A DNA stretch of 64,000 nt, from the IMG/VR virus record IMGVR_UViG_3300031576_000002, positions 62,001 through 126,000 of that record; one strand, 5' to 3'. Positions 22,251 through 54,365 of this stretch are shown in pieces. The notes beneath the pieces are model-generated. The model did no database searches. It was given only the letters and a program-made list of their open reading frames with translations, and was not told the DNA's origin. The position numbers were made by a program, and so were the translations under genes. Each line of letters starts with the position of its first letter. The stretch's first letter is position 1.

Positions 22251-22694
22251 CTACGCCGGGGTAACCGTCGCAATCAGCACCGTGGCCCGTTCCATGACGA
22301 ACGTGGTACCCACGCTGATGGTAGTGCCGTACTCGGTAAAGAGGCAGTTCCGGTATGCGGTGCGGACGGGTGCAGCTCCGGCGGGTCGGTTCATGGTCTC
22401 AAGGATGTCAAACGGCTGGTTGAAGTCTTCGATGGTACGCACGTCGGTTCCGATGGACTGCATCAGGTTCAAGGAAAAGAGGCGGATTCGTTCCATCGTC
22501 GCCGAGATGTCGCAAATGCCCGGCACGATGTCAACAACCTTGGGGCCGCTGTCGAAGAGGATTTCGCGGACTCGATCGACAGTCTTGGAGAAGGTCGGAT
22601 TGAAGGACTGGAGGTTGCCGATGGGCTGATTGTTTACACTCAGAGTATAGGCCCACCAAATGCTACTACGTACATTTGCGGGGAGTGTGGACAC
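22251..22694 (-). CDS. Tail tube protein
   Basis: 147 aa; IGNLQSFNP..EIL..IVPG motifs; perfect SD AAGGAGGT; position after the sheath. Confidence 0.8.
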   Translation of the reverse strand: MSTLPANVRSSIWWAYTLSVNNQPIGNLQSFNPTFSKTVDRVREILFDSGPKVVDIVPGICDISATMERIRLFSLNLMQSIGTDVRTIEDFNQPFDILETMNRPAGAAPVRTAYRNCLFTEYGTTISVGTTFVMERATVLIATVTPA

Positions 22695-22737: not shown

Positions 22738-23703
22738 TTACAGGACAAGCGTAACTTCACGAGGGGCTACAGTATCAGCCGTTGTTGCAGCAAACTCCAC
22801 GGCTGGATCAAAGCGCTCCCACGCCTTTCTGATTTTCCAGTAGCGCCTGAAGTATTCTATCCATTTCGGCCTGTTGTGGTTTGTAGCCATGTGGCACGCA
22901 ACGCACGAAGAGATAAGATTTCGGCTGAGGCCCTTACCCGTCTTACCGTAGTTATGATGCTTGTCGTAGTCCACATGGTGTACACTCAGTTTGACCTTAC
23001 AGCCCTTCTGGTGAATTCCGCAGATCTGGCAAGTGTACCAGTCCCGCTTTCTAATCCTTCGTCGAAGCCGTTTGCTGAATTCAGGAGGGTGTGGAAGAAA
23101 CGATGTTCCGCCTTTCCAGTTATAGTGGTTTGGACCTGAGAATCGTTCGATCATCTCAGGACGATTGAAGGTCTTTTTCAGACTGGCTGTGATCTTAGCC
23201 TGATGCTCTGGCGTCTTCTTTCTACCTTTGTTCCAACTCCCCCAGCCAGGTGGAGGCTTCCAAGGATTCGCAGCTCGCGCCGCTCGAATCTTCTGGCGTG
23301 TCTCTTCCGAGAGGTGGCGCCCTTTGAAGTAAGAAGTAGCCCTGCCACGAGTGTGCGCTAGCTTCTGCACTTCAATTTGGCTACGCCTTTTTATTCCGTG
23401 AATCTTCAGCCATCTGGATACAGGAGTAACGCTGCATCCGATTTCTTCGGCAATCTCTGCAACCGACATCTCTGCGTACTTTGCTTTCATCCAGCTCTTA
23501 TCTTTGAGGGTGGCGTAGGGAAGGCGTAGCTTTACAGTCGAAGGCATTCCCATCGGACGTACTGGAATTTTGGCCTTCCGCAAGCTTCTTAGAACTAGGG
23601 GCTTACTTACGCCGAGGCGGTCTGCCACTGCCTGCGCTGGCAGGCACTCCACCACATATAGTTGCTTCAAGGCTAGCGGGTCGAGATTGATGCGAGCCGG
23701 CAT
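22738..23703 (-). CDS. HNH homing endonuclease with HTH/NUMOD3-like repeats (intact)
   Basis: HLSEETRQKI, WNKG, NWKGG, RD.YTCQIC, VHHVDYDK..NL..C..CH. Confidence 0.9.
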   Translation of the reverse strand: MPARINLDPLALKQLYVVECLPAQAVADRLGVSKPLVLRSLRKAKIPVRPMGMPSTVKLRLPYATLKDKSWMKAKYAEMSVAEIAEEIGCSVTPVSRWLKIHGIKRRSQIEVQKLAHTRGRATSYFKGRHLSEETRQKIRAARAANPWKPPPGWGSWNKGRKKTPEHQAKITASLKKTFNRPEMIERFSGPNHYNWKGGTSFLPHPPEFSKRLRRRIRKRDWYTCQICGIHQKGCKVKLSVHHVDYDKHHNYGKTGKGLSRNLISSCVACHMATNHNRPKWIEYFRRYWKIRKAWERFDPAVEFAATTADTVAPREVTLVL

Positions 23704-23759: not shown

Positions 23760-24629
23760 CTATTCGAAGGAGGCGGCTGTTGCAGCAAATTCCACGGCAG
23801 GGTTGAAGTGTTCCCAGGCTGTCCTAATCTTCCAGTAACGCCTGAAGTATTTGACCCACTTTTTTCTATCCGTGTTGGTTCGGACGTGGCAAGGTATACA
23901 CAGTGTTGTAAGATTCTCGGGCACGTTATTATGCTTATCGTAATCTACACGGTGAACGCTCAGGCGTGCCTTACAGTCTTTCTGCTGCACACAACATATC
24001 TGGCATATCTGCCCATCCCGTGCCCGAATTTCTCGCCGTAACTCTGCGCTAAAAGTTCTCGGATATGGGTACTTTGCAATTCCGCCCTGCCAATTGTGAT
24101 TGAGCGGACCCGATATATCAGGACGAAATTTTCCCTTACCCTGTGCAACTCGACCTTGCTTAAAAGTTAAGCGGACAGCCTCGCTCCGGCTACGAAGGGG
24201 TATCCCAAATTTTTGAAATGACGCTACTACAACGCTCTGGGTACAGCCGAGCTTTGTAGCAATATCAGAAGTTGCTAAAGTCTTGTACTGCTCACGCAAC
24301 CACGCGGGATCTTGAAGCTCTGGGTACTGCGTTGGACCGTAGATTGTAGCTTTATGGAATTTGAGAACTCGCACGATAGTGGGACGGGTTACTCCAATCT
24401 TCTGTGCAACTTGTTCAGCAGAATGGCATTTCTCGTAAAGGTGTAGGATCCGATCGTGGTCCAGACTGTTCCAGATACTTGTAGGATGCCGCTCGATGCC
24501 CGAGCTAACCATAAACGTCCAGACTTTGTACTTCGAGACGCCCAAGTTTTTGGCGATCTGAAGGCACGTCATGCCCTGCTTTCGCAGGTGCTTGACGCGC
24601 TCTGGGTCGAGGTCTATACGCGCTGGCAT
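23760..24629 (-). CDS. HNH endonuclease paralog with catalytic His-to-Arg change
   Basis: Start reassigned to MPARID (matches paralog MPARIN); VHRVDYDK instead of VHHVDYDK. Confidence 0.85.
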   Translation of the reverse strand: MPARIDLDPERVKHLRKQGMTCLQIAKNLGVSKYKVWTFMVSSGIERHPTSIWNSLDHDRILHLYEKCHSAEQVAQKIGVTRPTIVRVLKFHKATIYGPTQYPELQDPAWLREQYKTLATSDIATKLGCTQSVVVASFQKFGIPLRSRSEAVRLTFKQGRVAQGKGKFRPDISGPLNHNWQGGIAKYPYPRTFSAELRREIRARDGQICQICCVQQKDCKARLSVHRVDYDKHNNVPENLTTLCIPCHVRTNTDRKKWVKYFRRYWKIRTAWEHFNPAVEFAATAASFE

Positions 24630-24661
24630 GCTACAGTTCGAGGCGGGCTCAGACTGTAGCA
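24630..24661 (-). promoter_or_regulatory. Hairpin/extended -10-like element (TGCTACAGT) before the HNH start
   Basis: GCTACAGT...ACTGTAGC inverted repeat abutting the ATG. Confidence 0.45.
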
Positions 24662-24686
24662 CACTCCAACTAGCCACGCCAGCAGC

Positions 24687-26318
24687 TTACTCGAACGAAG
24701 CCACAAATGCGAAATTCACGTCCAGGAAACGAAGCGGGAATGCAGGCTTGACTCTCGCCCGCACAAAGATCCTGCGCGGCTCGATCGTGTCCTGCTGCGC
24801 CTGCACGTCCCGGAACTCCGCCAGGATTCGATCCTGGACAAGAGTCTGAAGAATGGACGTGACCGAGGTCTCGATCGCACCTTCGGTGTCTGCCGTGATC
24901 TTGGTATTTCGGTAGAGATCGAACAGGCGCAGGCGCACGAACTGCCGGAGATAGTCCGCCGTGTCCTGAACGCTCAGGTCTTCCGTGAACACATTGGTCG
25001 TGTCCACGGTAATCGGAATCGCCATGATCGTGCCGAGGTTGGCGATATCGGCACGGCGCCGCTTGAAGGGAATGACGCCGTTTCGCCGAAGCTCTCGGGC
25101 CTCGTCGAGGATCCAGCTATCGTAAAGCGTGACGCCCGAAATGGGGGCGAAGTTGTTCGGCGCTCCGATGAACGATCCCGCCAGGAGTCCGCCGGTTGCA
25201 GCCATCAAGAAGTTCACGTTCTGATTGCTACCCAGCGTAGTCGCTGAAGCCGTCGAGCCCGAGATCGTACCTACCTGGATCGCTACCGCAGATCGCACGG
25301 TATGGCCGTCCAGATCGCCCGGAGGACCCTTCACGCCGGGAAGTGCGATTCGGTTTCCGGCGGTCTGGTTCTCATCGAACGGATTCGCCTGCTCCTTGAA
25401 CGACTCGGCAATCGCCGTCATCAAGGTAAGATCCGTACCTCTGGGGTAGCTGCCCAGCAGGGTACGCTCCCGGCCCTCGTCAGGGGCAGAAGCGGACAGG
25501 GCGTGGATGAAGAACCGGCTATTGTTGTCCTCGCCGAAAGTCCAGTCAGCTCTGTCCGGGTCACTGCCGGGATCCATGGGCACCAGCCAGAGCTTGAACT
25601 CCTCCACCTTGTTGATCTTCTGCACGGCAATGTCGTAGCTGGGCTCCATCTCTAGTGTCCCGCCTATGGGAGGAACAGTAGTAGGGTTAAGCGGATCCCC
25701 CCAGTCCAGTGCGGTCACGCCCGGCAAAGAACCATTGCCGGTAACGGAAGGATGGAAGTCGAGCTGGAGAATGACCACACCAGGCGCGTTGTTCTTGAAC
25801 GCCAACCGGCCCGCCGCCACCAGCGGATTGACCTCGCGGTCGTCAGCGAGAACCGAGGAGAAGAACAGCTCGCTGCCCCGCTCTCGAATCATCAACTGCT
25901 CGTCGAGATACAGCAGCGGCTCGAACGCGCTTGCGGGAATCTCCACGGTGTAGTTGAGGAAATACTTGGTTCCTACCGGGGGCTCTGCACCTCCCGGTGC
26001 CCATTCGACCCGTGCGGGAACGGTCGAGCTGGGAGAAGGCGTGATGGTGTAGTCCGTGCCCTCGGAGAACTGCGTCGCTCCCGGCGCTCTGCCGACACCC
26101 CAGACAGTCACGACAGGGCTGGTACTCGGCTCCGCGCGCAGATCGTCGTAAGAAGTCGTGGAGCTACGGGTCAGGCCGAGATTGCGTTCCTTGATGACCT
26201 CGTAGTCGCCCCGGCCAATAATGGCGGGAAAACGCTCGAAACCCGCGGGCGCGATGATGCCCTGGTTCTCGATCGTCACTACGATGCCAGGAAGACGTTC
26301 GCCAGTAGAGAGCGGCAT
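24687..26318 (-). CDS. Contractile tail sheath protein
   Basis: N-terminal LPGIVV; C-terminal LSVQDTADYLR..DTIEPRRIFV..PAFPLRFL sheath domain. Confidence 0.9.
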   Translation of the reverse strand: MPLSTGERLPGIVVTIENQGIIAPAGFERFPAIIGRGDYEVIKERNLGLTRSSTTSYDDLRAEPSTSPVVTVWGVGRAPGATQFSEGTDYTITPSPSSTVPARVEWAPGGAEPPVGTKYFLNYTVEIPASAFEPLLYLDEQLMIRERGSELFFSSVLADDREVNPLVAAGRLAFKNNAPGVVILQLDFHPSVTGNGSLPGVTALDWGDPLNPTTVPPIGGTLEMEPSYDIAVQKINKVEEFKLWLVPMDPGSDPDRADWTFGEDNNSRFFIHALSASAPDEGRERTLLGSYPRGTDLTLMTAIAESFKEQANPFDENQTAGNRIALPGVKGPPGDLDGHTVRSAVAIQVGTISGSTASATTLGSNQNVNFLMAATGGLLAGSFIGAPNNFAPISGVTLYDSWILDEARELRRNGVIPFKRRRADIANLGTIMAIPITVDTTNVFTEDLSVQDTADYLRQFVRLRLFDLYRNTKITADTEGAIETSVTSILQTLVQDRILAEFRDVQAQQDTIEPRRIFVRARVKPAFPLRFLDVNFAFVASFE

Positions 26319-26394
26319 TTTTGTGCCTCCGAATTGCTAAGGGACTTTCGCAATCTTCGCACCCTCAACGCTTCCGCATGAAAGCGCGATTGCA

Positions 26395-27126
26395 TCAAGG
26401 GTCGTAGAGAGTTGCAGAAAAGAACGCGGCTTCGATCTCATCCAGGCGGACGAGACGATCTTCCCACTCGCCTCTCACCGGAATCGTAAGCTCGGTCTGG
26501 TAGAGACGAAAGTCGGTTGCTACATCCTCTGTCGAGGACTGCGAGCCAAAGCTGGGAGCGTCTGTAATCACGAAGCCGTACTTCTTCATCAGGAGCGCTT
26601 TGAATACGGGATGCGCGGTAAAGTACCCCGCCATGTCCGCTAGATTGTCCGCTTCTTCTCTGGTTCTAGCGACCGCGGTAAAGCTCAGCACGAACTCCGC
26701 CGCACCTCCGAAAACAGCTTCATTGGGGTCAAGAGATTCGTCGATCTCCATGAAGCCGCCGAACGATCCACTGCCGAGCATGGAGCGGATCTCGTTGCCG
26801 TCTGGATTGGTCGGAATCCTGGGAGCTTGTACAGTGGTGAAGCTCAACTCTTTCATCGGCCCCGTAACGGCATTGATGAGCACGCAGGGATACTCCCGGT
26901 TCCTGAGATCAATCCCTGCCAGCCCTCTTGTCTGCCCCGTAGCTTGGTCGAGTCCGGCTGCTCTCGCTTCCCACTCTTCGTAGGTTCTGGCAGTCGGCTT
27001 TCGTGAGAACTTGATCGCTTCTCTGCCATCCGAGAGACGAATCACATCTCGATCAACCAGGTCGAAGAGGCGCCGAAAGTAATCGACGAATCCGTGCTTG
27101 ATTCCGCGTGTGAGCCGAAAGTACAT
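26395..27126 (-). CDS. Putative tail terminator/completion protein
   Basis: Upstream of the sheath; YPCVLI and ARTREEADNLAD motifs. Confidence 0.55.
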   Translation of the reverse strand: MYFRLTRGIKHGFVDYFRRLFDLVDRDVIRLSDGREAIKFSRKPTARTYEEWEARAAGLDQATGQTRGLAGIDLRNREYPCVLINAVTGPMKELSFTTVQAPRIPTNPDGNEIRSMLGSGSFGGFMEIDESLDPNEAVFGGAAEFVLSFTAVARTREEADNLADMAGYFTAHPVFKALLMKKYGFVITDAPSFGSQSSTEDVATDFRLYQTELTIPVRGEWEDRLVRLDEIEAAFFSATLYDP

Positions 27127-27488
27127 CAGCCTTTCCTTTCAACCAGCAGTGCTTCTGTCCAGGCTCTCACACCTGGAAGAGGCTCGGCAATCCGCATGTA
27201 GATTCGGGGGGCTCTTCCTGTCTGCTTTGCCATATCTCGTGCGATGCGGATGACAGTGGGAATGTTCTCCGGAGTCTCTTTCGTGCCCTTTTCCTTGAGC
27301 GCGATTCTACCCTGGCCGCCTCTTGCCGTCGCTTCCAGCCGATTGATGAAGTCTACGTCGCCTGCTTCCGCCGCTTGCATCACGGCTTCGGTGTAGCCCT
27401 GCCGTACAAAGGCGTTCGTCTGCTCCGCCGGCAGTGCCTTCAAGTAATTCTGGAACTGCTGAATGGCTCTGGTATCTACATTAAACAT
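27126..27488 (-). CDS. Hypothetical protein
   Basis: Translationally coupled ORF. Confidence 0.5.
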   Translation of the reverse strand: MFNVDTRAIQQFQNYLKALPAEQTNAFVRQGYTEAVMQAAEAGDVDFINRLEATARGGQGRIALKEKGTKETPENIPTVIRIARDMAKQTGRAPRIYMRIAEPLPGVRAWTEALLVERKG

Positions 27489-27771
27489 GATTCGAGTACA
27501 CCTTTGCGCCGAGAAGATCGCTCAGCGCCGCGATTGGCTCTTCCGATTCTACGCGAAGCAGCAAAGCTTTGCGGTTCCGAAAGCACACTTTTTCTCCGGC
27601 CAGAAGCGCAGATGAAAAGGGATGCGGGACTCGCAACACGATCGGGCTAGTGGGAGTTTCGGTAGCAGGAGAGATTCGTACTTCGACCGTGCTGTCGGGA
27701 TCCCATCCTGCCGTTACTTCCGACACAACTCCTAAGAGTTCATCCGGGCAGGCAGAGTGCCAGGCGTACAT
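27481..27771 (-). CDS. Hypothetical protein
   Basis: Translationally coupled ORF. Confidence 0.45.
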   Translation of the reverse strand: MYAWHSACPDELLGVVSEVTAGWDPDSTVEVRISPATETPTSPIVLRVPHPFSSALLAGEKVCFRNRKALLLRVESEEPIAALSDLLGAKVYSNHV

Positions 27772-28265
27772 CAGAATGCCCAGCCTGCGGAAAATACAAC
27801 GGAGTTGATCCCGCCATTCGGTGCATCAAGGCCGGCATTCGATAGATGGTGGATTCGAGTTCCAAGCTCCAGTTCCTCGATTACACGCACGCTCGCGCCG
27901 GCTTGCAGCAGGAACATGACCTTGTCCGCCTGCCCACGCGCCCCATCGAAATCCGTATAGCCCGCGCCTGCATCTGCTCTTGCTGTAAAGCGGCTGTACT
28001 GGACACGACCTCCGCCGTACAGGAACGCGCCCCAGCCGTGGTACGGCGCATAGACACCCAAACCTTGAAGGCCGATCGCGCCCTTGAGGTACTCGAAAAG
28101 TACAGGAGTTCGACTCTCTACTTCGACCAGACCGAGGCGTGAATCAACCAGGTTCCCGTTTCGCGTACCGCCCAAGGGAACGCCGAATCCCCAGCCTGCT
28201 TCGATAGAAGGCTGCGCTTGCGCCGCAGTTGCAAGCAGCAGGAGGAAGGCCAGCGTTCGCATCAC
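27771..28265 (-). CDS. pagL: PagL-like lipid A 3-O-deacylase (outer-membrane beta-barrel)
   Basis: Signal peptide (..ATAAQA), amphipathic strands, HHLSNAGLDAPNGGINS catalytic motif, terminal Phe. Confidence 0.8.
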   Translation of the reverse strand: MMRTLAFLLLLATAAQAQPSIEAGWGFGVPLGGTRNGNLVDSRLGLVEVESRTPVLFEYLKGAIGLQGLGVYAPYHGWGAFLYGGGRVQYSRFTARADAGAGYTDFDGARGQADKVMFLLQAGASVRVIEELELGTRIHHLSNAGLDAPNGGINSVVFSAGWAF

Positions 28266-29155
28266 GTTCGCACGACTGGAATCTTAGTTCTCGGATCGTT
28301 CTCTTCTAGCAGGACTGCCGTGAATTTCTGGCTTTTCAAGCGGGACTGGCCGTTGGCGAATCCAAGCCCCCAGTCCAGCTCGTTCATCACGACTTCGTAG
28401 TATGCGTTGTTCGCAGCGCGAACGAGCAGATCGTGTTCGAGGATCACGGGCGTGAAAGGCGGCACGGAGGTCCACCATTCGATTCTACTTGCGCGCGTCA
28501 TACCCGCAGGCTGCACGGAGAGATCACCGGGTTCGGCAGGAAGCGCCAGTGGAATGATGTGCGGCGCGGTAACGCCGCGGAAGAGGCGCTTGGGGTCCAG
28601 GAATTGCCGGTAGCCTCGCAGACTCGTCTCCTTAGAGGGGAAGTTGTCTACGACCGGCTGACGGCTGTGGAAGTCAGTAGCAGGAGAAATCCAACGGTAC
28701 AGGACGTGAACGGGGTCCGTGCCGTTGTGGGGCGGAGCATTGAGGATGAGGTAGACCACTCCTGGCAGGGGGTTATCACTCGCGTCTACACGCCTTGCTT
28801 GAAAGTCGAGAGAGAACTGAGCTGCATTCGGTGAGAAGGTATCCTTGTCCTGAATCTGAGTTAGCTCGATCGCACCGAAGCTGGTCGTGAGCGTCGCCTC
28901 GAACCCTTCCGAGTCGGGGAATTCTTCCGGCGGATCTCGCTCTTCGTGCCAGATGACGGTACGCGGCAATCTTACGTCAGGGTCGAGATCATAGTTTCCG
29001 AGCGTCTTCACCACTCGATCGGAGTCGTAGCGCCGCTGGAGAAGATAGAACGGCTCGCCTCCAAACTGGAGGTACTCGTCCTGGTGCGCGATGACAATGT
29101 CAAGCGCACCCGTGGCGTCAAGGACGTGCCAGGGTTCGACCCAGAAGCGACTCAT
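28262..29155 (-). CDS. Putative neck/head-closure protein
   Basis: GGEPFYLLQR and PVILEHDLLV..YEV motifs; position upstream of the tail genes. Confidence 0.45.
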   Translation of the reverse strand: MSRFWVEPWHVLDATGALDIVIAHQDEYLQFGGEPFYLLQRRYDSDRVVKTLGNYDLDPDVRLPRTVIWHEERDPPEEFPDSEGFEATLTTSFGAIELTQIQDKDTFSPNAAQFSLDFQARRVDASDNPLPGVVYLILNAPPHNGTDPVHVLYRWISPATDFHSRQPVVDNFPSKETSLRGYRQFLDPKRLFRGVTAPHIIPLALPAEPGDLSVQPAGMTRASRIEWWTSVPPFTPVILEHDLLVRAANNAYYEVVMNELDWGLGFANGQSRLKSQKFTAVLLEENDPRTKIPVVRT

Positions 29156-29439
29156 GCTGTAGGTGAAGGTAAGAGTGGAGCTGCGGGCGGTGCAGCCGGC
29201 GGAACTTCGGCTGGGGGAGTAGGCGGCTTACGCGCAGCAAGCGGAGGGCGCATGGCAAAGTACGCGCCCACAACGGTCATGACCAAAGCGCTAAACTGAT
29301 CGTTCGGAAGATCAATCGCAACTCCCAGAAGAGGACCACAAGCCCTGAGAGTTACAAGTCCGAGGTAGGTCCAGACCACGGAAAGCGTGATGATGGCTCG
29401 AATGCTGCCCTCTGGAAGATTAAGGCTCCCGCGTTTCAT
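29152..29439 (-). CDS. Two-TM membrane protein (holin-like)
   Basis: LNLPEGSIRAII plus two hydrophobic segments. Confidence 0.5.
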   Translation of the reverse strand: MKRGSLNLPEGSIRAIITLSVVWTYLGLVTLRACGPLLGVAIDLPNDQFSALVMTVVGAYFAMRPPLAARKPPTPPAEVPPAAPPAAPLLPSPTA

Positions 29440-29810
29440 GGACGCAGTGTCCCACGGCCAAAGCGCGGTACTTTGACGAGTTGTGGCTGCTCACCTTTCG
29501 GCTTGATGAGCACCGCTTCCTGCCCGTAGCGGCGTCCGTAATCAAGGGCCTGGCTGAGGGGCATGTTCTCAACGCGAATATCGAGTTCCTTCTGCCCCCG
29601 CCAGTTACCCGGCTCTACCCGAAGCCGGGGAAAGCGCTCCTTCAATTCGTCGAGAAGCTGCCAGTGCCGTTCTAGGTTCTTTGCTTCTGGCGCACCAGGG
29701 TTGAAGGCGGAGACGACCGCGTACTCCCAATGTTGAGCGTTCCGGCCCAGCCCGTAGTCGAGAACTTCGCGGACTGGATTCAGGAAGCGCCTGCGCTTAG
29801 GCGAGCCCAT
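29436..29810 (-). CDS. DUF3293-like protein
   Basis: VSAFNPG..N..L..EL..G.W...E..ALDYGRRYGQEAV. Confidence 0.6.
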   Translation of the reverse strand: MGSPKRRRFLNPVREVLDYGLGRNAQHWEYAVVSAFNPGAPEAKNLERHWQLLDELKERFPRLRVEPGNWRGQKELDIRVENMPLSQALDYGRRYGQEAVLIKPKGEQPQLVKVPRFGRGTLRP

Positions 29811-30090
29811 GGGAAAGGTCGATCAGGCGGTCCATGAAGACCTCGGCGAACTGCTCGGCCGCGAACTCGGGATCCTCTTCAGCACCTACCTGGTCGCGGT
29901 AGCGCGCTTCAAAAAGGCGGTCCGCGTACAGCTTGAGGTCGCCCGAGTTGACTGCGACCTGTGCGTTCTGGCGGTCTTCCAACCACGTCTTCTCGGCTGC
30001 CTCTTCCGCAAGCTCTCGAAGGTCGAGAGCGCTGGACGCCAGCTTAGAGATGGCGCCATGAAGAGCGGATCGGGCAAATTTTTGTCTCAC
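29797..30090 (-). CDS. Hypothetical protein
   Basis: Coupled ORF, acidic C-terminus. Confidence 0.5.
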   Translation of the reverse strand: MRQKFARSALHGAISKLASSALDLRELAEEAAEKTWLEDRQNAQVAVNSGDLKLYADRLFEARYRDQVGAEEDPEFAAEQFAEVFMDRLIDLSHGLA

Positions 30091-30093
30091 CGC

Positions 30094-30279
30094 CTACCCC
30101 TCTCGCTTTCCGTGAACGGCGCGGTAGCTGACGCTTTGCATCATCGGGCTCCGCGGATCCAGTCCTACCGGATCCAGCTTCCACAGCGGCACTACAGAGG
30201 CAGTCGTCTGCTTGCCGACTCTTGCAGCGCGTTGCTTGCGGGCACGCTTGGTATTCTTGCGGACTTGCTTAGATGTCAT
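30094..30279 (-). CDS. Small basic protein
   Basis: SD GAGGA; fills the gene gap. Confidence 0.45.
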   Translation of the reverse strand: MTSKQVRKNTKRARKQRAARVGKQTTASVVPLWKLDPVGLDPRSPMMQSVSYRAVHGKREG

Positions 30280-30288
30280 GGAGTCCTC

Positions 30289-30420
30289 TCAGGTGTATGG
30301 ATTTTTCCAGAGTACCGTTACGATGCCCGCCAAGAGTAGCACGATCCAGGCGCGTACGATACCGGCTACGAGCAAGGCGACGAAATTGATTCCTGCCAAA
30401 GTTCGAGCCGCAAAGTCCAC
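30289..30420 (-). CDS. 43-aa membrane peptide (not in the ORF track)
   Basis: AAGGAGG-N5-GTG; MDFAARTLAGINFVALLVAGIVRAWIVLLLAGIVTVLWKNPYT. Confidence 0.55.
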   Translation of the reverse strand: MDFAARTLAGINFVALLVAGIVRAWIVLLLAGIVTVLWKNPYT

Positions 30421-30471
30421 GGTGCCCTCCTTGCCGGAAGCATCTTAGCCGCTTGCAAGGAAGGAGCTACA

Positions 30472-30900
30472 TCATCTTTTGCGCCGGTAGCCGTGGCGGG
30501 CGGCGTGAGCGTCCAGCACTCGCCCGACTTCTGCACGGGCCTTGTCGTTCCAGGAGCCCCAAGGCATCTCGTCTTCCAGCACTTCGCGGCTGGCCTCGAT
30601 GCCGCAGTCGTAGGAAGAGGACAACGACTTGGTCGCTTCCAGGCAGCTCTCGAAGTGCATGACCATGGCCGCAATCCCACGCTGCATTCTCTTGGCCGCC
30701 GCTTCGACCCCGGGCTCGTCTACCCGAAGCCCCCACGCTGCGGGCGTCACGGGAATGTTGTAACGCTGAATATATTTTCCAAGTCGCTTCCGCTCTTCCG
30801 CCTTCTTGGCAATACGCGGCATCAAATCAACAACCTGGGCGGGCTCGGTAGGAGGGCTCTTGATAAAGCCTAGCTCTTTGCGCAATCGCGGAGTTCTCAT
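30472..30900 (-). CDS. Hypothetical protein
   Basis: Start MRTPRL with ATGA overlap. Confidence 0.5.
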   Translation of the reverse strand: MRTPRLRKELGFIKSPPTEPAQVVDLMPRIAKKAEERKRLGKYIQRYNIPVTPAAWGLRVDEPGVEAAAKRMQRGIAAMVMHFESCLEATKSLSSSYDCGIEASREVLEDEMPWGSWNDKARAEVGRVLDAHAARHGYRRKR

Positions 30901-31091
30901 TTTGAACAGACTACCGCTCGCAATTCTTTGTCTAGGTGCTGCCCGCAACGCTTGCAACTGATTGGTTCTTCTTCGACGGTCTTCCAGAGCCGCCCCAGTC
31001 GCCCCCACTTTCCGCAGAACATCGTCACGATTTCGTCGCGCCCCTGGACAACATGTACAGTCCCACTGGGAGTGTAGCGGGCCAGGTTCAC
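30897..31091 (-). CDS. Small Zn-finger protein
   Basis: GTGA overlap; H..FCG..CKRC. Confidence 0.45.
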   Translation of the reverse strand: MNLARYTPSGTVHVVQGRDEIVTMFCGKWGRLGRLWKTVEEEPISCKRCGQHLDKELRAVVCSK

Positions 31092-31375
31092 GCCGATGCG
31101 AACTCGGGGAGAGGCAGCCACCGCGATCGATCCTCGGGCGGATCGAGAACGACCCGTACCCACATCGGGTTGATGTATCCCGTCAAGTTCTCCAAGTTGA
31201 TCTCTGAAACCAGGAGATCGTCTGCGTCTTGATAGATCGTAGTCAGGTAGCCCACGTAGGCACGGGCAGCGTCCTCGCAGGAGAATACGGGAATCCACAC
31301 GCAACGGCTCTCGCAGAATGGATGGATCATGAACGGCGCATGTCCTTCTTCACGGACGATGAAAAAGACTTGCAC
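31088..31375 (-). CDS. Hypothetical protein
   Basis: Coupled ORF. Confidence 0.45.
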   Translation of the reverse strand: MQVFFIVREEGHAPFMIHPFCESRCVWIPVFSCEDAARAYVGYLTTIYQDADDLLVSEINLENLTGYINPMWVRVVLDPPEDRSRWLPLPEFASA

Positions 31376-31376
31376 G

Positions 31377-31985
31377 TTAGATTCTCAGGAAGTAACGGAA
31401 CTCTTCGCACATTCGCGGACTGCCAAACTCATAACCTTCGTAGTAAAAGTGTTCTCCATAGCAGTGGTAGGGCCATACAATCTTTAGGCGGTCCGAGTGG
31501 TACTCCACGGCGGCTTTGAGTTTTACCCCGTGCTCTAACTTCAGCCAATCTGCAAACTCGTATATGACCTCGTGAAAGACTTGAGTGTTTACAGGGAGTT
31601 CGTACTCCTGCGTGAACTTTTTGCCATCAAACACCATCAGCTTGCAAATACTGATGTCGCCGGCAACGGTCCGGCAGAGAGCGTCCAACCTGCGGCGCAA
31701 AAGGGCAAAGCTCGAAGCTGGCTCTGCGTAGGGCTCTTCTTTAGAAGGTCGCGACGTAGGGCGCTCTGGTCGCGGAAGCGTTCGGAATCCTGACTTTGCC
31801 AGGATTCGATACGCTTCGTTGATCGCCTTCATCCGTTCCTCGGCCATGTCCCGGAACTGCTTGGGCGCACGGTCAGGGTGATAGGCGAGACTCAGAAAGC
31901 GATAGACCTTCTTGATGTCCGCTTTGTCCGCGGACATGGAAACACCTAGCACCTGACAAGCTTCTTGGGGCGTGGAAAGCGGCAT
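31377..31985 (-). CDS. J-domain (DnaJ-like) protein
   Basis: VLGVS..IKKVYR..YHPDR..AEERMKAINEAYRIL. Confidence 0.9.
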   Translation of the reverse strand: MPLSTPQEACQVLGVSMSADKADIKKVYRFLSLAYHPDRAPKQFRDMAEERMKAINEAYRILAKSGFRTLPRPERPTSRPSKEEPYAEPASSFALLRRRLDALCRTVAGDISICKLMVFDGKKFTQEYELPVNTQVFHEVIYEFADWLKLEHGVKLKAAVEYHSDRLKIVWPYHCYGEHFYYEGYEFGSPRMCEEFRYFLRI

Positions 31986-31986
31986 A

Positions 31987-32568
31987 CTACCGCCGTGACA
32001 ATGGATACGCGATATGCACGGCCCTAGAAGCGGCCAGAACCGCCTCTTTCCACCTATCGTACTCGCGCAGCCCTTCCCGCCAAGCGGCTGGACTCAAATC
32101 TCTCGGATCGAGCGAAGTAAACGCTTCGTCGATGCGTTCGGCGTCATTCGAGAAGAAGACGGAGCGCCACCCTTCAGGCGGCCCTTGTCCCCGGCCAAAG
32201 CCTGAGAATCCGGACTCCTTGGCGTACTGCTGGAAAGACACAATCTGATCGTCCATCACGTTGAAGCTGGAGTCTGAGTGCTCGATCTCATGCCGAAGGC
32301 GTTTGACTAGATCATCTCGGGTGCTGAGGTCAAGATCATTGCGCTCCGCCTGGAACTTCTTGAGCACGGCTAGGAGTCCCTGCTCTTCCCAGGTATTCCA
32401 GAACTCACCAATTCCCGGACGCTGAAAGCCAGGATCCTCGGACATGATGTCCTGGACTTTTTCGAGCGTGTCTTGAACGGTCTTGCGCTGCTTCTGGATA
32501 CGGCGTTCGCCGAGGTCGATGACATCGGCCTGAGAGAAGCGTTGAAGTACAGCCTGGAGGCGTTTCAT
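31987..32568 (-). CDS. Hypothetical protein with amphipathic leader
   Basis: ATGA-coupled start MKRLQAVLQRFSQA. Confidence 0.55.
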   Translation of the reverse strand: MKRLQAVLQRFSQADVIDLGERRIQKQRKTVQDTLEKVQDIMSEDPGFQRPGIGEFWNTWEEQGLLAVLKKFQAERNDLDLSTRDDLVKRLRHEIEHSDSSFNVMDDQIVSFQQYAKESGFSGFGRGQGPPEGWRSVFFSNDAERIDEAFTSLDPRDLSPAAWREGLREYDRWKEAVLAASRAVHIAYPLSRR

Positions 32569-32798
32569 TTTGATCTCGGCCCGAACTGAGTCTTGACCCA
32601 TTCCAGAGAGCTTGCTCTACCGTCTCCGAACTGATTCCAGAAAGCGTGAAAGGTTCCCTCGGGGTAAGGAAAGAGGGCTTGGTAGAGGTAGAGCTTGTCC
32701 CTGATGTTGTCTTTGTCGTGGATCCGTTGAATCTTGGACTCGTAGGGCTCCTGGACAGGAGCAGAGAAGCGGTGGAGGATGGAGGTGAGGGGGCTCAT
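32565..32798 (-). CDS. Hypothetical protein with MSPLT leader
   Basis: MSPLTSILHRFSA. Confidence 0.5.
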   Translation of the reverse strand: MSPLTSILHRFSAPVQEPYESKIQRIHDKDNIRDKLYLYQALFPYPEGTFHAFWNQFGDGRASSLEWVKTQFGPRSK

Positions 32799-32803
32799 TG
32801 TGC

Positions 32804-33160
32804 TCACGCGAATGTAAGATACTCCGGTGAAGCAAAGATGTTTCGCCGTTTCAAGGGCTCCGGAGATTCTGCTTCGCACCAGCGTTTCGTCCACGGCAGT
32901 GAATCAATGTCGGGGAACAGATAGAAAGGGGCTCTCATACCTCCGACCGCAGAGGTCCATGCAGGGGGCTTCTGCCCCTTCCGAAGGGCGAGTAGCTCGA
33001 TGATGGCGGCAGCTAGGGCTAGTTCTTCTGAACTTCCCAGGCAGGGTCTTTCTACCTCCCCGAGGTTATCGACAGAGCGCAGAAGCTCCATCGTCCACGC
33101 ACGCACGTAAAAATCGTTCTGTGCGTGCGCAGCAACTGCAATCTTTTCAAGTAGGCTCAT
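32804..33160 (-). CDS. Probable antitoxin-like partner of the nucleotidyltransferase
   Basis: ALAAAIIELLA..PPAW..PFY..ESPEPLKRRNIF, a pattern I associate with DUF6036 neighbours. Confidence 0.55.
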   Translation of the reverse strand: MSLLEKIAVAAHAQNDFYVRAWTMELLRSVDNLGEVERPCLGSSEELALAAAIIELLALRKGQKPPAWTSAVGGMRAPFYLFPDIDSLPWTKRWCEAESPEPLKRRNIFASPEYLTFA

Positions 33161-33734
33161 GAAGCCTTCCCCACAAATCGTCAAAGGCATACTGCATTTT
33201 AAGCTCTCGGCCTTTTTGAAGAAAGGGCTGCAAACTTTCCCAGACACTCTCTTTGCTCGCATCTTCTGCCAAAGCCTTGAGCAGTTCCGTAGCGTCTCCG
33301 TAGTCACCCGCTCCACGCCAAGCCCCCAGCTTCAGAGCTAGCAACTGTTCTGTAGAGGGCTGAGAAGCTGTGATCCCTTCTGATTGTACCAGAACAGGAC
33401 CCTCGGATAGAACATCGACATAGCCCTTGGCCGCATCATTGAGCCAGTCACGGGGCCAGTTGTTCTCTGCGGCTACCGCCTCTGCCCATTTCCGCACGAG
33501 CTGTGCATTGGGCGATAGAATGACGACGTCAACATCTTTGGTGGACTCTCGGGTGCGGTAGCCAAGAACCATAGCAGCGCCACCAAGAACGACCAAATGG
33601 ATCTGTTGACCATCGGCATGGGCAAGTTCGCCGAGTCGGGTAAGGCCGGATTGAATATCGGAAAAGTTGAAGGAGGAGTCTGCGGGAGACGCGGAAAGGC
33701 AGAGGCGACGGAGGATAGCTGTGAGGGGGCTCAT
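33147..33734 (-). CDS. DUF6036/AbiEii-like nucleotidyltransferase
   Basis: LVVLGGAAM..RESTKDVD..WLND..LLALKLGA.R..DYGD. Confidence 0.8.
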   Translation of the reverse strand: MSPLTAILRRLCLSASPADSSFNFSDIQSGLTRLGELAHADGQQIHLVVLGGAAMVLGYRTRESTKDVDVVILSPNAQLVRKWAEAVAAENNWPRDWLNDAAKGYVDVLSEGPVLVQSEGITASQPSTEQLLALKLGAWRGAGDYGDATELLKALAEDASKESVWESLQPFLQKGRELKMQYAFDDLWGRLHEPT

Positions 33735-34936
33735 GCTGCGGCCTGGACGAGACGGGGTATGCCGAGGAAGGTGCGGAGGCGCTTGCGGACTAGCTTGCGG
33801 CCTTCCTTGGACTTCAGTTCGCACTCCCACACAATGAGCAATTTCCATCCTGCATCAGCTAGAGCTTCTGCCTTTGCTTTATCACGTAGTACGGCGGCGA
33901 TCTGCGGAACGTACTTAGGAGTGTACGGCTGATGCCATTCATTACCAACAGCGTGTGCATGCCAAAAGCATCCATTGCACTCTATCGCTACTTTAGTTTG
34001 TAAGAGCGCGATGTCGAGGGCTCGCTTCTTACCACGCTGGTAGCGATGGTCAAAAGTGTAATCAGTTTGAAACTCTACCCCCAGTTTGCGCAAAATTCTC
34101 TGGACACGGCGTTCAGGTAGCGAATCCTTGACTGGCTGGCAACGGCGTAACGGAATACCGAACTTCTTCACTCGGTCGGCTATGGTACTCGTGGTGCAAT
34201 GAAAGCATCGAGCAATTTCCGGAATTGTCAGCTTTTGAGCTGTATAGAGCCCTTCTAGCGACTCTTTTGTAATATCGGGCCTTCGCTCACGATCCGGCCA
34301 GTTACCAGCTTCGATTGTTCTTTTAGCCCAAATCTTCGTCGCCGTTACTGTATCGCGCCTTTTTACCCCACTTCTTTCCAGGCGGTCAATAATAGTAGTT
34401 GTATCAACTTTAAGTTCTGCTGCAAGACTCGAAGCGCTCCTGCCGTCCTTGTATTGAACGACTATGTACGCATCATCAAGCTCTTTAGCCGCAAAACTCT
34501 TCCTAACGCTTACCCCTTGTGCAGACATGTAACTGCGTACGGTAAGACCGTCAAGCCCGGTACGGTTAGCTATCTCTCTGATACTATGCCCTGCCTTGTA
34601 GAGAGACACTATTTCAGAAGACTTTTCTGCGTACTTCCTCCATTCGTACTTGTAGACTCCCGCAAGAGTCAAACGATTTATTACGATTTTCTCTGTTGTT
34701 TCTACTTCGCGTGCAATCGCTCGCGGACCTTTTCCCGTCTGGTAGAGCTGTAAGATACGTTCAGCATCGACCTCAACTCTTCCAGGGCACTTTTCGATGA
34801 TAACCCCCGCTTCGCGCAGTCTGGACTTGACGAGCTTTCTGGAAACTCCTAAAGAAGCCGCCAAAGCGCTTAGGCTTTCCCGCGCCTTGTAGCGTGCAAC
34901 TAGCACGGCCGAGTTGAGATGGATTTGGCGTTTCAT
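33731..34936 (-). CDS. Free-standing Vsr/DUF559-type endonuclease with multiple HTH repeats
   Basis: Five LY..G.S..IA repeats; LDIA..VAIECNGCFWHAH..RD..GWKLLIVWECE; TATAAAAT upstream. Confidence 0.85.
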   Translation of the reverse strand: MKRQIHLNSAVLVARYKARESLSALAASLGVSRKLVKSRLREAGVIIEKCPGRVEVDAERILQLYQTGKGPRAIAREVETTEKIVINRLTLAGVYKYEWRKYAEKSSEIVSLYKAGHSIREIANRTGLDGLTVRSYMSAQGVSVRKSFAAKELDDAYIVVQYKDGRSASSLAAELKVDTTTIIDRLERSGVKRRDTVTATKIWAKRTIEAGNWPDRERRPDITKESLEGLYTAQKLTIPEIARCFHCTTSTIADRVKKFGIPLRRCQPVKDSLPERRVQRILRKLGVEFQTDYTFDHRYQRGKKRALDIALLQTKVAIECNGCFWHAHAVGNEWHQPYTPKYVPQIAAVLRDKAKAEALADAGWKLLIVWECELKSKEGRKLVRKRLRTFLGIPRLVQAAA

Positions 34937-34970
34937 GCAGCGGGCAATTTTATAGCAACTGCGTAGAACA

Positions 34971-53115: not shown

Positions 53116-54297
53116 TTAGGTCGTCTTGAGACCCTTCGACACGCCGGCCTTGGTAATGATGAGTTCGTCGATCAGCTCCCACCAGAACCAGCCCCGCACC
53201 GGCTTGCCGGCCTGGAACTGATTCGTCGGCTCGCTGAACAACTCGACCCACACCGGGAAGCCGCCGAGGTACTCAGGAGCGGTCACGCAGAAGATTTCAC
53301 CAGGACGGATGACCTCGAAGTCGTTCGGACGGCGACCGGCCGAAACGATCACGGGGACGCTGAGGATCATCCCGATGAAGCCTGCCATGACCAGCTCGCG
53401 CTGCGTCACGTTGTCCACTTCCTGGCTCATCACCGTCACGAAGTCGGAAATCTCGCGGCGGTTGACCAGAAACTTGTCGGCCACGAGCCGATTCTTCTCC
53501 ACCTGGTAGCGAATCGCTTCCATGGTGGCGAGGTTGGCGGTGGCAAAGAACACGAGGTCGTTCACCGCAGTTGCTGCGGCGTCGAGCCGGCTACGCAGGA
53601 TGCTGTCCTCCTGCTTCTCGATCGCCTGCCGAGCACGATCCTGGATGCGGCTCAGGATGTCGTAGCCCGCCTGGTACACGTCAGCCAGGTTGATGGTCGG
53701 GTACGCGGACACCACACGCGGGACCGGGAACACGTACCGGCCACCCAGACGGGTTTCCGGGGTCTGTGCGTCCACGCCCACATCGAACGCCGTCGCGAAA
53801 ACGTCCTTGTCGTACCGGACGGTTTCGCCCTGCCTCACCAATCTCACGGGCAGGATCCGACGGCTGAACCCGTCGTAGTCGAGCGTCTCCTTGACGGGAT
53901 TGACGAGCTGCTGGCCAAGAATTTCGAACGCCTCTCCGCGGGGATTCGCCAGCGCCTCGCGGATCATTCCTTCCTCTTCCGCAGCCGTGACGTTGATGCC
54001 TGCGCTTGCGGTGCGATCCCAGGTCGGGACAGCATCGACCTCGCCCTCCGCCATGCTGTCGATCACATGCTTGATCTGGAACAGGACGTCGCGCTGGTCG
54101 TAGGCGTTGATCTCACCCTGACGGTCGAAGACCATCTCCCGCGAACGCTGCTTGGTACCAGCGCGGGTCAGACCGCCGAAAGCGGGAAGGTTGGCGGGCT
54201 CGCCAGTGCGGCGATCCCGGTAGGTCAGACCGGCAGGCGCGAGCGGCTTCTTGCCCCCCGTGGCTGCGGCGCCCAGTTGAAGATACGGGTTAGACAT
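53116..54297 (-). CDS. Major capsid protein (HK97-like)
   Basis: About 393 aa; AAGGAG SD; NPVKETLDYDGFSRRIL..YDKD..ARQAIEKQED motifs; strong codon bias; follows protease, scaffold and decoration genes. Confidence 0.85.
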   Translation of the reverse strand: MSNPYLQLGAAATGGKKPLAPAGLTYRDRRTGEPANLPAFGGLTRAGTKQRSREMVFDRQGEINAYDQRDVLFQIKHVIDSMAEGEVDAVPTWDRTASAGINVTAAEEEGMIREALANPRGEAFEILGQQLVNPVKETLDYDGFSRRILPVRLVRQGETVRYDKDVFATAFDVGVDAQTPETRLGGRYVFPVPRVVSAYPTINLADVYQAGYDILSRIQDRARQAIEKQEDSILRSRLDAAATAVNDLVFFATANLATMEAIRYQVEKNRLVADKFLVNRREISDFVTVMSQEVDNVTQRELVMAGFIGMILSVPVIVSAGRRPNDFEVIRPGEIFCVTAPEYLGGFPVWVELFSEPTNQFQAGKPVRGWFWWELIDELIITKAGVSKGLKTT

Positions 54298-54365
54298 TTT
54301 CATCTCCTTTTGGAAGGGGCGGAGGAATTTCCTCCTCCACTCCGGATTTCAGTTCGTCTTTGTCA

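What the first reader, a model, noticed from the sequence alone, without database searches (positions are those of the whole stretch)
27771..28265. Phage-encoded PagL-like lipid A deacylase inside the neck/tail operon
Seen: signal peptide, H-x-S-N-A..P-N-x-G-x-N motif and terminal Phe, translationally coupled between structural genes. Known: PagL removes the 3-O acyl chain of lipid A in the outer membrane. Inference: late remodelling of host LPS (superinfection exclusion, aid to lysis, or preventing progeny from binding cell debris); it also implies a diderm LPS host.
Basis: partly seen in the sequence, partly recalled or inferred. Interest (0 to 1): 0.6.

Follow-up and report, generated by a model that had tools for sequence, protein, structure and literature searches.

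The report
Phage-borne PagL-like lipid A deacylase
A 205-kb uncultivated phage carries, inserted in its tail-gene block, a gene for an outer-membrane enzyme of the PagL family, which bacteria use to strip one fatty acid from lipopolysaccharide; related genes sit in about twenty other phage genomes, so some phages probably remodel their host's outer membrane.

Summary
Window 27771..28262 (-) encodes a 163-aa protein with a Sec signal peptide (cut AQA|QP), the motif H-x-S-N-A-x4-P-N-x-G-I-N and a terminal W-A-F. It overlaps both neighbouring genes by one base.

It matches Pfam PagL (E 1.7e-13, 51 bits, cut-off 23). It folds with high confidence (pLDDT 92.7) into an 8-stranded barrel. The best solved match is P. 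aeruginosa PagL (Z 17.9), and all nearest ESM Atlas clusters are PagL (TM 0.80). The catalytic His and Ser and the conserved Asn are present. The Glu of the Pseudomonas triad is Asn here, as in most relatives.

The contig is a jumbo myovirus. The gene lies between the head module and the tail terminator and sheath genes.

New findings:
- The gene plus a 96-aa ORFan form a 773-bp insertion that related phages lack at the same junction.
- Its nearest relatives lie on unrelated phage-like contigs and form a supported clade.
- A motif scan found 13 more PagL genes in IMG/VR, some in complete phage genomes.
- PHROG 15758 ("unknown function") is a PagL family.

Enzyme activity, expression timing, biological role and host are all inferred. 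This is a new member of a known family in an undescribed viral setting.

The parts
27771..28262 (-). CDS of the PagL-family outer-membrane barrel: 163 aa from ATG, with an alternative GTG start at 28265; the mature protein is 147 aa, about 15.5 kDa, pI 5.9
   Evidence: Pfam PF09411 E 1.7e-13. AF2 model pLDDT 92.7 with 8 strands. 2erv_A Z 17.9, rmsd 2.0 over 136 residues. Atlas PagL clusters TM 0.80. Coordinates and translation checked.
28215..28262 (-). Sec-type signal peptide MRTLAFLLLLATAAQA, predicted cleavage after AQA
   Evidence: Read directly from the sequence. Helix 2-15 precedes strand 1 in the model.
27804..27848 (-). Active-site motif H140-x-S142-N143-A-x4-P149-N150-x-G-I-N154 (numbering of P0001; ATG numbering is one less)
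   Evidence: Aligned to HYSNAGLKQPNDGIE of PagL 2erv. H, S, A and N150 are invariant in 20 relatives. Pattern match.
27774..27797 (-). C-terminal strand end VFSAGWAF (aromatic-x-Phe), the usual end of barrels inserted by the BAM machinery
   Evidence: Read directly. It is the last strand, 153-163, in the model.
27481..27771 (-). 96-aa ORFan inserted together with the PagL gene; function unknown
   Evidence: Only itself found among 5.8 billion proteins. No Pfam or PHROG match. Absent from relatives L011, L013 and L016.
27489..28261 (-). 773-bp insertion relative to related phages, holding PagL and most of the 96-aa ORF
   Evidence: In L013 and L016 the homologues of the flanking genes abut with a 4-nt overlap. 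In L011 and L012 a 48-aa single-TM ORF fills the slot.
28262..29155 (-). Conserved 297-aa gene directly upstream; function unknown; it marks the upstream edge of the insertion
   Evidence: Homologues of 54-60% identity on five other contigs in the same order with the tail genes. No family match. The AF2 model was unusable, pLDDT 39.
27126..27488 (-). Conserved 120-aa gene directly downstream of the insertion
   Evidence: 32-34% identity to the 108-aa genes that follow the 298-aa gene in L011 and L013. L016 is similar by eye.
26395..27126 (-). Tail terminator / tail completion-like protein, 243 aa
   Evidence: Atlas structural matches TM 0.53-0.63 to Phage_tail_terminator_9 and SP10_terminator clusters. 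39% identity to the L013 gene before the sheath.
24687..26318 (-). Contractile tail sheath, 543 aa
   Evidence: phrog_279 tail sheath E 5.9e-9 and Phage_sheath_1C. 48% identity to the L013 sheath.

Best explanation
The gene is an accessory gene of a jumbo myovirus. It encodes an enzyme that is made in the infected cell, not a virion part. The inferred pathway is as follows.
1. The Sec system exports the protein and its 16-residue signal peptide is removed.
2. The host's BAM machinery inserts it into the outer membrane as an 8-stranded barrel.
3. His140 and Ser142 (end of strand 7), Asn154 (start of strand 8) and the conserved Asn150 of the loop between them then face the outer leaflet. There they hydrolyse an ester-linked acyl chain of lipid A, as bacterial PagL removes the 3-O chain.

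The gene has no promoter or terminator of its own and overlaps its neighbours inside the neck/tail block. It is therefore most likely made late, together with the tail proteins.

The most likely consequence is a loosened, more curved and more permeable outer membrane at the end of infection, which would ease release of progeny. A changed cell surface or debris is a secondary possibility.

Shown here: family membership, fold, motif, signal peptide, insertion status and recurrence in phages. Inferred: export route, activity, substrate, timing and benefit to the phage.
For: Family and fold:
- PF09411 at 51.3 bits (cut-off 23) is the only Pfam match at E<1.
- The best PDB sequence match is PagL 2erv, aligned through the active-site motif.
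- The AF2 model (pLDDT 92.7, pTM 0.83) has a signal helix plus 8 strands.
- 2erv is the top match by Foldseek and by VIA (Z 17.9, rmsd 2.0, 136 of 150 residues).
- All nearest Atlas clusters are 100% PagL, TM 0.80.

Active site under selection:
- H140, S142, A144 and N150 are invariant, and N143, P149 and G152 nearly so, in 20 relatives sharing only 25-37% identity.
- The same residues hold in 17 viral or phage-like members.
- His and Ser are the residues shown to be essential in Salmonella PagL (PMC4958258).

Operon position:
- Overlapping stop and start codons and no promoter or terminator nearby.
- Tail terminator-like protein and sheath lie 0.6-1.5 kb downstream. The head genes lie upstream on the same strand.

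Accessory status: the gene is absent from the same junction in L013, L016, L011 and L012.

Benefit to phages in general:
- The nearest relatives (P0003, P0004, P0005) lie on phage-like contigs that share no other gene with this phage. They form a 98/95-supported clade with it.
- Thirteen more IMG/VR contigs carry PF09411 genes. These include complete genomes with terminal repeats (178.6 kb and 45.4 kb) and a 350-kb genome.

Against: - No activity, localisation or expression data exist.
- The position of Glu140 of the Pseudomonas triad is Asn. An amide cannot act as a charge relay, so catalysis may be slower or may run as a Ser-His dyad. Asn does occupy this site in 16 of 20 relatives and Asp in 4, bacterial members included.
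- The Pfam match covers only residues 87-162. NCBIfam has no match.
- By fold alone PagL is tied with OprF-N and OmpA (Z 16-17).
- Salmonella PagL raised vesiculation without an envelope stress response, and the permeability effect in Burkholderia was small. A strong lytic effect is therefore not established.
- The gene is not next to any recognisable lysis gene. No lysozyme or Amidase_2 family gene was found in the record.
- In the other phages PagL sits in varied neighbourhoods.
Confidence: 0.55

Rival explanations
1. The enzyme is the same but the purpose differs. Deacylated lipid A alters LPS packing or surface display, so that superinfecting phages, or the phage's own progeny, no longer adsorb to the infected cell, its debris or its vesicles. 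This would be a receptor-spoiling function rather than a release function.
For: - In L005 the clade-mate P0005 lies directly upstream of a 477-aa protein with a GDSL/SGNH esterase domain and a tail-fibre PHROG match. That kind of protein edits surface polysaccharide receptors.
- The slot holding PagL here holds a small membrane protein in relatives L011 and L012. That fits a locus for envelope-directed accessory genes.
- PagL-driven vesicles are enriched in deacylated lipid A.
Against: - Lipid A is buried and is not a usual phage receptor.
- Exclusion functions are normally early genes or prophage genes, whereas this gene sits in a late structural block with no promoter of its own.
- The receptor of this phage is unknown.
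Confidence: 0.25
2. It is an outer-membrane esterase of the PagL fold with a different substrate. Candidates are another acyl position on lipid A, a phospholipid that has strayed into the outer leaflet, or a host-specific glycolipid.
For: - The N-terminal half (strands 1-4), which forms much of the barrel wall, lies outside the Pfam match.
- There is no NCBIfam equivalog match.
- The third triad residue differs from the one characterised structure.
- The nearest cellular relatives are in Verrucomicrobiota and Acidobacteriota MAGs. To my knowledge their lipid A is poorly characterised.
Against: All residues known to matter in characterised PagLs, apart from the acid, are conserved in register. 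Every nearest structural cluster is PagL.
Confidence: 0.15
3. It is a non-catalytic outer-membrane barrel. It would act like phage Lom/Ail/OmpX-type proteins, as an adhesin, a shield or a plug for a receptor, and would keep only the PagL fold.
For: - Phages commonly encode 8-stranded outer-membrane barrels: 28 BFVD matches at E<=0.001.
- The fold scores for OmpA and OprF-N nearly equal that for PagL.
- Asn replaces the triad acid.
Against: - The His-x-Ser-Asn...Pro-Asn motif is invariant across phage and bacterial relatives that otherwise share about 30% identity. A mere scaffold would not be expected to keep it.
- No Ail_Lom, OmpA or OMP_b-brl match at E<1.
Confidence: 0.1
4. The gene is an artefact: either a bacterial gene joined to phage DNA by mis-assembly, or a dead passenger that is not expressed.
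For: There is a single metagenomic record and no second copy of this exact gene anywhere. No read-level check was possible.
Against: - Both junctions are in-frame one-base overlaps with phage genes.
- GC (0.596) and GC3 (0.604) lie within the range of the neighbouring genes.
- The ORF is intact and folds at pLDDT 92.7.
- PagL genes occur in complete phage genomes with terminal repeats.
Confidence: 0.03

Closest known systems
PagL of Pseudomonas aeruginosa (PDB 2erv), lipid A 3-O-deacylase
   Same: - An 8-stranded outer-membrane barrel of about 150 residues after signal-peptide removal.
- VIA Z 17.9, rmsd 2.0 over 136 residues.
- The motif H-x-S-N-A-G-L-x-x-P-N-x-G-I aligns residue for residue.
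- It is the best PDB sequence match (E 0.018).
   Different: - Only 16-18% identity.
- Glu140 of the Ser-His-Glu triad is Asn154 here. The triad numbering is from my own knowledge of Rutten et al. 2006, PNAS 103:7071; the paper could not be fetched.
- It is encoded by a phage inside a tail-gene block, not by a bacterial chromosome.
PagL of Salmonella Typhimurium
   Same: His and Ser of an H-F-S-N-G motif are essential for activity. Its expression deacylates lipid A and increases vesicle formation (PMC4958258). That is the effect proposed here.
   Different: It is a PhoPQ-regulated bacterial gene used during infection of animals.
Uncharacterised phage PagL genes (phrog_15758 and 13 IMG/VR contigs, L040-L052)
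   Same: - All are PF09411 members of 142-163 aa with a hydrophobic N-terminus, the same motif and mostly an aromatic C-terminus.
- phrog_15758 covers the PagL gene of the 350-kb phage G305 at E 2.8e-19 and weakly matches this protein.
   Different: - They belong to other clades. This protein groups instead with P0003, P0004, P0005 and P0009 at 98/95 support.
- None is annotated as PagL, and the PHROG is labelled 'unknown function'.
Phage outer-membrane barrels of the Lom / Ail / OmpX type (for example lambda Lom)
   Same: Phage-encoded, Sec-exported 8-stranded barrels placed in the host outer membrane as accessory genes within or beside structural modules. The fold is shared, with Ail and OmpX at Z 11-12.
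   Different: They have no catalytic motif, and this protein has no match to their Pfam families. They are typically expressed from prophages, whereas this gene has no promoter of its own.
Phage LPS-modifying enzymes acting on O-antigen (Gtr glucosyltransferases, Oac acetylases; from my own knowledge)
   Same: The phage alters host lipopolysaccharide through an accessory gene.
   Different: Those are inner-membrane enzymes of temperate phages that act on the O-antigen for exclusion. This one is an outer-membrane hydrolase aimed at the lipid A anchor.
Spanins and disruptin-type outer-membrane lysis proteins (from my own knowledge)
   Same: The proposed end result is the same: weakening the outer membrane as the last barrier to release.
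   Different: There is no sequence or structural relation. Those proteins act by membrane fusion or as peptides, not enzymatically. A lysis role for PagL is only inferred.

Membership tests
PagL (Pfam PF09411, lipid A 3-O-deacylase) | Sequence match to the family profile above the curated cut-off | tested here: met
   51.3 bits against a cut-off of 23, E 1.7e-13, residues 87-162 on profile positions 55-135 of 136. Confirmed by six-frame search of the record.
PagL (Pfam PF09411, lipid A 3-O-deacylase) | Eight-stranded antiparallel outer-membrane beta-barrel | tested here: met
   AF2 model pLDDT 92.7 with 8 strands. 2erv is the top match by Foldseek and by VIA, Z 17.9. Atlas neighbours are all PagL, TM 0.80.
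PagL (Pfam PF09411, lipid A 3-O-deacylase) | Catalytic His and Ser in an H-x-S-N motif at the end of strand 7 | tested here: met
   H140 and S142 align to the His and Ser of HYSNAG in 2erv. Both are invariant in the alignments. Strand 7 is residues 132-142.
PagL (Pfam PF09411, lipid A 3-O-deacylase) | Conserved Asn of the P-N motif (assigned to the oxyanion hole in PaPagL, from my own knowledge) | tested here: met
   P149-N150 is aligned to P-N of 2erv. N150 is invariant.
PagL (Pfam PF09411, lipid A 3-O-deacylase) | Acidic third member of the triad (Glu140 in PaPagL) on strand 8 | tested here: inconclusive
   The aligned residue is Asn154. Of 20 relatives, 16 have Asn and 4 have Asp at this site, and none has Glu, bacterial members included. 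The site is therefore variable in the family. Whether Asn supports catalysis was not testable.
PagL (Pfam PF09411, lipid A 3-O-deacylase) | Export signal and C-terminal aromatic residue for outer-membrane insertion | tested here: met
   Signal peptide with an AQA cleavage site and terminal W-A-F, read directly.
PagL (Pfam PF09411, lipid A 3-O-deacylase) | Removes the 3-O-linked acyl chain of lipid A | not testable with these tools
   Needs expression and lipid A mass spectrometry.
Phage moron (autonomously expressed accessory gene) | Present in one phage and absent from the same locus in relatives | tested here: met
   The 298-aa and 108-aa homologues abut in L013 and L016. A 48-aa ORF fills the slot in L011 and L012.
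Phage moron (autonomously expressed accessory gene) | Own promoter and terminator flanking the gene | tested here: not met
   No minus-strand sigma-70-like promoter or terminator in 24000..33000. One-base overlaps with both neighbours. The scan covers sigma-70-type sites only. The gene is therefore filed as an accessory insertion, not as a classical moron.
Ail/Lom, OmpA, OmpX and OMP_b-brl barrel families | Match to their profiles | tested here: not met
   PagL was the only Pfam family at E<1.

The most novel reading that the evidence does not exclude
Enzymatic stripping of an acyl chain from lipid A is a recurrent and so far undescribed phage strategy. Several unrelated lineages of uncultivated phages, with genomes of 45 to 350 kb, have each kept a PagL-type deacylase. 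They would use it to soften or vesiculate the host outer membrane at the end of infection. This would be an enzymatic alternative or supplement to spanins, or a way to spoil the surface against re-adsorption.
Probability: 0.3. Interest if true: 0.75.

Novelty: new member of a known kind. Interest (0 to 1): 0.55.

Why it matters
Phages are known to edit the O-antigen of their hosts and to breach the outer membrane with spanins. Editing the lipid A anchor itself has not been described in any paper the searches found.

If these phage PagLs are active, they would add an enzymatic route to outer-membrane weakening or surface change. That would give a testable explanation for how some spanin-poor phages exit. 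It would also turn an 'unknown function' PHROG (15758) into an annotated family.

Small, self-inserting lipid A deacylases from phages could also serve as tools for making less endotoxic LPS or more vesicles in laboratory strains.

Tried and rejected
Searches for relatives that found nothing:
- The word-based protein search found only the protein itself.
- IMG/VR scans with P0001, alignment A2, P0003, P0011, P0004 and the 297-aa neighbour gave no confirmed relative.
- tblastn of six different PagL queries against 50,697 GenBank phage records gave nothing. blastn of 8 kb around the gene also gave nothing.
- NCBIfam had no match.

- The first DNA-motif scan of IMG/VR is void. The corrected pattern was checked on the window and on the loci before the real scan.
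- One search was one base too long and was resent.
No read coverage, expression or sample information was obtained, and read laying was not used.

Host:
- It was not identified. A genome scan with the conserved 147-aa protein found nothing.
- The nearest cellular PagLs are in Verrucomicrobiota and Acidobacteriota MAGs at no more than 44% local identity.
- Only 5 of 301 Verrucomicrobiota genomes matched at E<=0.001. This is too weak to name a host.
- Shine-Dalgarno use is low, 46 of 230 genes against a 13% background. I draw no conclusion from that.

Neighbours and lysis genes:
- The function of the 297-aa neighbour was not resolved. It has no family match, the Atlas model was poor and AF2 on 6 sequences gave pLDDT 39.
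- The lysis cassette was not located. There was no Phage_lysozyme or Amidase_2 match, and the only SLT domain is in the tape-measure-like protein.

Literature and other points:
- The PagL structure paper and the LpxR paper could not be fetched, and searches for the triad residues were unproductive. The Ser-His-Glu numbering therefore rests on my own knowledge.
- A virion-borne enzyme was considered and rejected. A cleavable signal peptide and a membrane barrel do not fit a soluble tail component.

Full report
**What is there.** The ORF at 27771..28265 (-) is real. The public gene call starts at the ATG one codon inside it, giving 163 aa and a CDS of 27771..28262. Below I use the numbering of P0001, which starts at the GTG; ATG numbering is one less.
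- The minus strand reads GTGATG at the start, so the stop of the upstream 297-aa gene shares a base with the ATG. It reads TTCTGATG at the end, so the PagL stop shares a base with the next ATG.
- The genes from 29810 down to 26395 form an unbroken chain with overlaps of 1-8 nt.
- A consensus scan found no sigma-70-like promoter or intrinsic terminator on that strand between 24000 and 33000.
- The N-terminus MRTLAFLLLLATAAQA|QP is a textbook Sec signal. The protein ends in W-A-F.
- The mature protein is 147 aa, the size of mature P. aeruginosa PagL.

**Family and fold.**
- Pfam gives a single match, PF09411 PagL: E 1.7e-13, 51.3 bits against a cut-off of 23, over residues 87-162. NCBIfam gives none.
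- The best sequence match among solved structures is PagL 2erv (E 0.018). HLSNAGLDAPNGGINSV aligns to HYSNAGLKQPNDGIESY.
- An exhaustive HMMER pass over 1.84 billion representatives found only 23 proteins at E<=0.001, the nearest at 40% identity.
- With 19 of them as the alignment, AlphaFold2 gave pLDDT 92.7 and pTM 0.83. The model has a signal helix at 2-15 and eight strands.
- Foldseek ranks 2erv first. VIA-align gives Z 17.9, rmsd 2.0 over 136 of 150 residues. OprF-N (17.2) and OmpA (16.4) are effectively tied, so the solved structures alone show only an 8-stranded outer-membrane barrel.
- The shape search of the ESM Atlas is more specific. Its nearest models fall only into PagL clusters, TM 0.80.

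**Active site.**
- In 20 relatives sharing 25-37% identity, H140, S142, A144, N150 and F118 are invariant. N143, P149 and G152 are nearly so.
- His and Ser sit at the end of strand 7, and N154 sits at the start of strand 8. That is the arrangement known for PagL.
- His and Ser are the residues whose mutation inactivates Salmonella PagL (PMC4958258).
- The one departure is the third triad residue. Glu in the Pseudomonas enzyme aligns with Asn154. The Ser-His-Glu assignment is from my own knowledge of Rutten et al. 2006.
- This is not a private defect. The site is Asn in 16 and Asp in 4 of the 20 relatives, including proteins on bacterial contigs.
- I score this feature as inconclusive, not as failed.

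**The phage and the gene's position.**
- The window is bases 62001-126000 of a 205,227-bp IMG/VR virus record, estimated 85% complete.
- On the same strand lie, in order of transcription:
  - a major head protein (53116..54303, phrog_2522, E 2e-47) and a head-decoration-like protein;
  - an intein-bearing protein, a PcfJ-like protein and a DnaJ-domain protein;
  - the PagL block;
  - a tail terminator-like protein (26395..27126; Atlas TM 0.53-0.63 to terminator families);
  - the tail sheath (24687..26318);
  - two HNH endonucleases;
  - a tape-measure-like protein with an SLT domain;
  - a baseplate wedge protein.
- Elsewhere the record encodes a PolA-UDG fusion, UvrD, Rad50, an intein-split RecA and a methyltransferase.
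- 'Inside the neck/tail operon' is therefore a fair description. The two immediate neighbours, however, have no assigned function.

**It is an insertion.**
- The 297-aa upstream gene has homologues of 54-60% identity on five other metagenomic contigs.
- In L013 the gene order is 298 aa, 108 aa, 239 aa, 502 aa, 148 aa. These correspond to window genes 28262..29155, 27126..27488, 26395..27126, the sheath and 22251..22694, at 34-68% identity.
- In L013 the 298-aa and 108-aa genes overlap by 4 nt, and the same holds in L016.
- In L011 and L012 the junction holds a 48-aa single-pass membrane ORF instead.
- In this phage, then, 773 bp (27489..28261) have been added. They hold the PagL gene and a 96-aa ORF with no relative anywhere.
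- The GC and GC3 of the PagL gene are like those of its neighbours. The insertion is therefore not recent.

**PagL genes recur in phages.**
- The four nearest relatives whose context could be read lie on contigs with phage-type content:
  - P0003 is on a 122-kb contig with many small ORFans, ribosomal protein S21, a Holliday-junction endonuclease, dNMP kinase, Amidase_3 and an intein.
  - P0004 lies beside PhoH, Rad52, a Clp-like ATPase and a DHH protein.
  - P0005 lies among ORFans, next to a GDSL-esterase protein with a tail-fibre PHROG match.
  - P0011 and P0014 lie among ORFans, one beside an ATP-dependent DNA ligase.
- These contigs share no other gene with this phage.
- P0007, by contrast, sits among ordinary bacterial genes.
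- In trees, this protein groups with P0003, P0004, P0005 and P0009 at 96/96 and 98/95 support. Branch lengths are near one change per site.
- A degenerate DNA pattern for the motif was validated on the window and on the loci. It then found 13 IMG/VR contigs.
- All 13 encode 142-163-aa proteins with a hydrophobic N-terminus and the motif near the C-terminus. All 11 non-redundant ones match PF09411.
- Their records include complete genomes with direct terminal repeats (178.6 kb and 45.4 kb) and a 350-kb genome that is 97% complete. Three of the five records tested have a terminase match.
- The tree resolves at least four viral groups.
- phrog_15758, labelled 'unknown function', covers the PagL gene of the 350-kb phage at E 2.8e-19 and weakly matches this protein.
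- No deposited GenBank phage matched by tblastn.
- No paper in the held library describes a phage PagL.

**How it most likely works.**
- The signal peptide and barrel imply export and insertion into the outer membrane of a diderm host.
- The conserved Ser-His site implies ester hydrolysis at the outer leaflet.
- The operon position implies late synthesis.
- PagL expression is known to raise vesiculation and permeability.
- I therefore favour a late loosening of the outer membrane that eases release. Surface spoiling against re-adsorption is the main rival, and the esterase tail-fibre neighbour in L005 points that way.
- No lysis gene was found nearby or recognised in the record. The role remains open.
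- The host was not identified.

**Verdict.** The protein is a divergent but genuine PagL-family member. What is new is the setting: an accessory insertion in a jumbo phage, belonging to a phage-associated clade of a family not previously noted in viruses. Activity and purpose need the bench.

Noticed in passing
window 29152..29439 (-): A 95-aa protein with two predicted membrane spans and a proline-rich tail lies two genes upstream of PagL. It is holin-like in size and topology. It has no family match and no homologue in the related contigs.
   Followed up: partly
L011:4458-4604 (+), also L012: In a related phage, the junction that holds PagL here holds a 48-aa single-pass membrane ORF instead. 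The slot looks like a hot spot for envelope-directed accessory genes.
   Followed up: partly
L005:6012-7445 (+): The PagL clade-mate P0005 is followed directly by a 477-aa protein with a GDSL/SGNH esterase domain and a tail-fibre PHROG match. This may link PagL to receptor-editing enzymes.
   Followed up: partly
window 22738..23703 and 23760..24677 (-); also 33731..35056 (-): Two tandem HNH homing endonucleases lie between the sheath and the conserved 147-aa (probable tube) gene. The relative L013 has one, placed after that gene. A third endonuclease-like ORF lies next to the intein-bearing gene.
   Followed up: partly
window 34971..36812 (-); G000:21112-24423; G000:49808-51688: Three intein-bearing genes: a 613-aa protein of unknown function, a 1103-aa protein with a LAGLIDADG domain, and RecA.
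   Followed up: no
window 29436..29810 (-): A 124-aa protein matches DUF3293 (E 8.7e-6) and, weakly, the S-adenosylmethionine lyase family. It may be an anti-restriction function.
   Followed up: no
window 31377..31985 (-): A phage-encoded 202-aa protein with an N-terminal DnaJ (J) domain.
   Followed up: no
G000:33365-34045 (-) and G000:138516-139391 (-): Two further candidate exported proteins. One is 226 aa with a twin-arginine-like N-terminus (RRTFGK followed by a hydrophobic stretch). The other is 291 aa with a lipoprotein-like LTASC box. Neither has a Pfam match.
   Followed up: partly
G000:133045-134928 (-): A 627-aa protein with GT2 and GT1-like glycosyltransferase domains. It is another possible surface-modifying gene in the same phage.
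   Followed up: no
G000:51685-54450 (-) and G000:146702-147874 (-): A family A DNA polymerase fused to an N-terminal uracil-DNA glycosylase domain, and a transposase gene (phrog_506, E 2.6e-106) inside the phage genome.
   Followed up: no
PHROG phrog_15758: This PHROG is labelled 'unknown function' but is a PagL-like family. It matches the PF09411 gene of a 350-kb phage at E 2.8e-19 and several PagL proteins at 1e-4 to 1e-8.
   Followed up: yes
G307:C1:19059-19370 and 20114-20704: In a 53-kb IMG/VR phage the PagL gene lies about 0.7 kb downstream of the large terminase gene on the same strand. This is another case of PagL inside a late or structural region.
   Followed up: no
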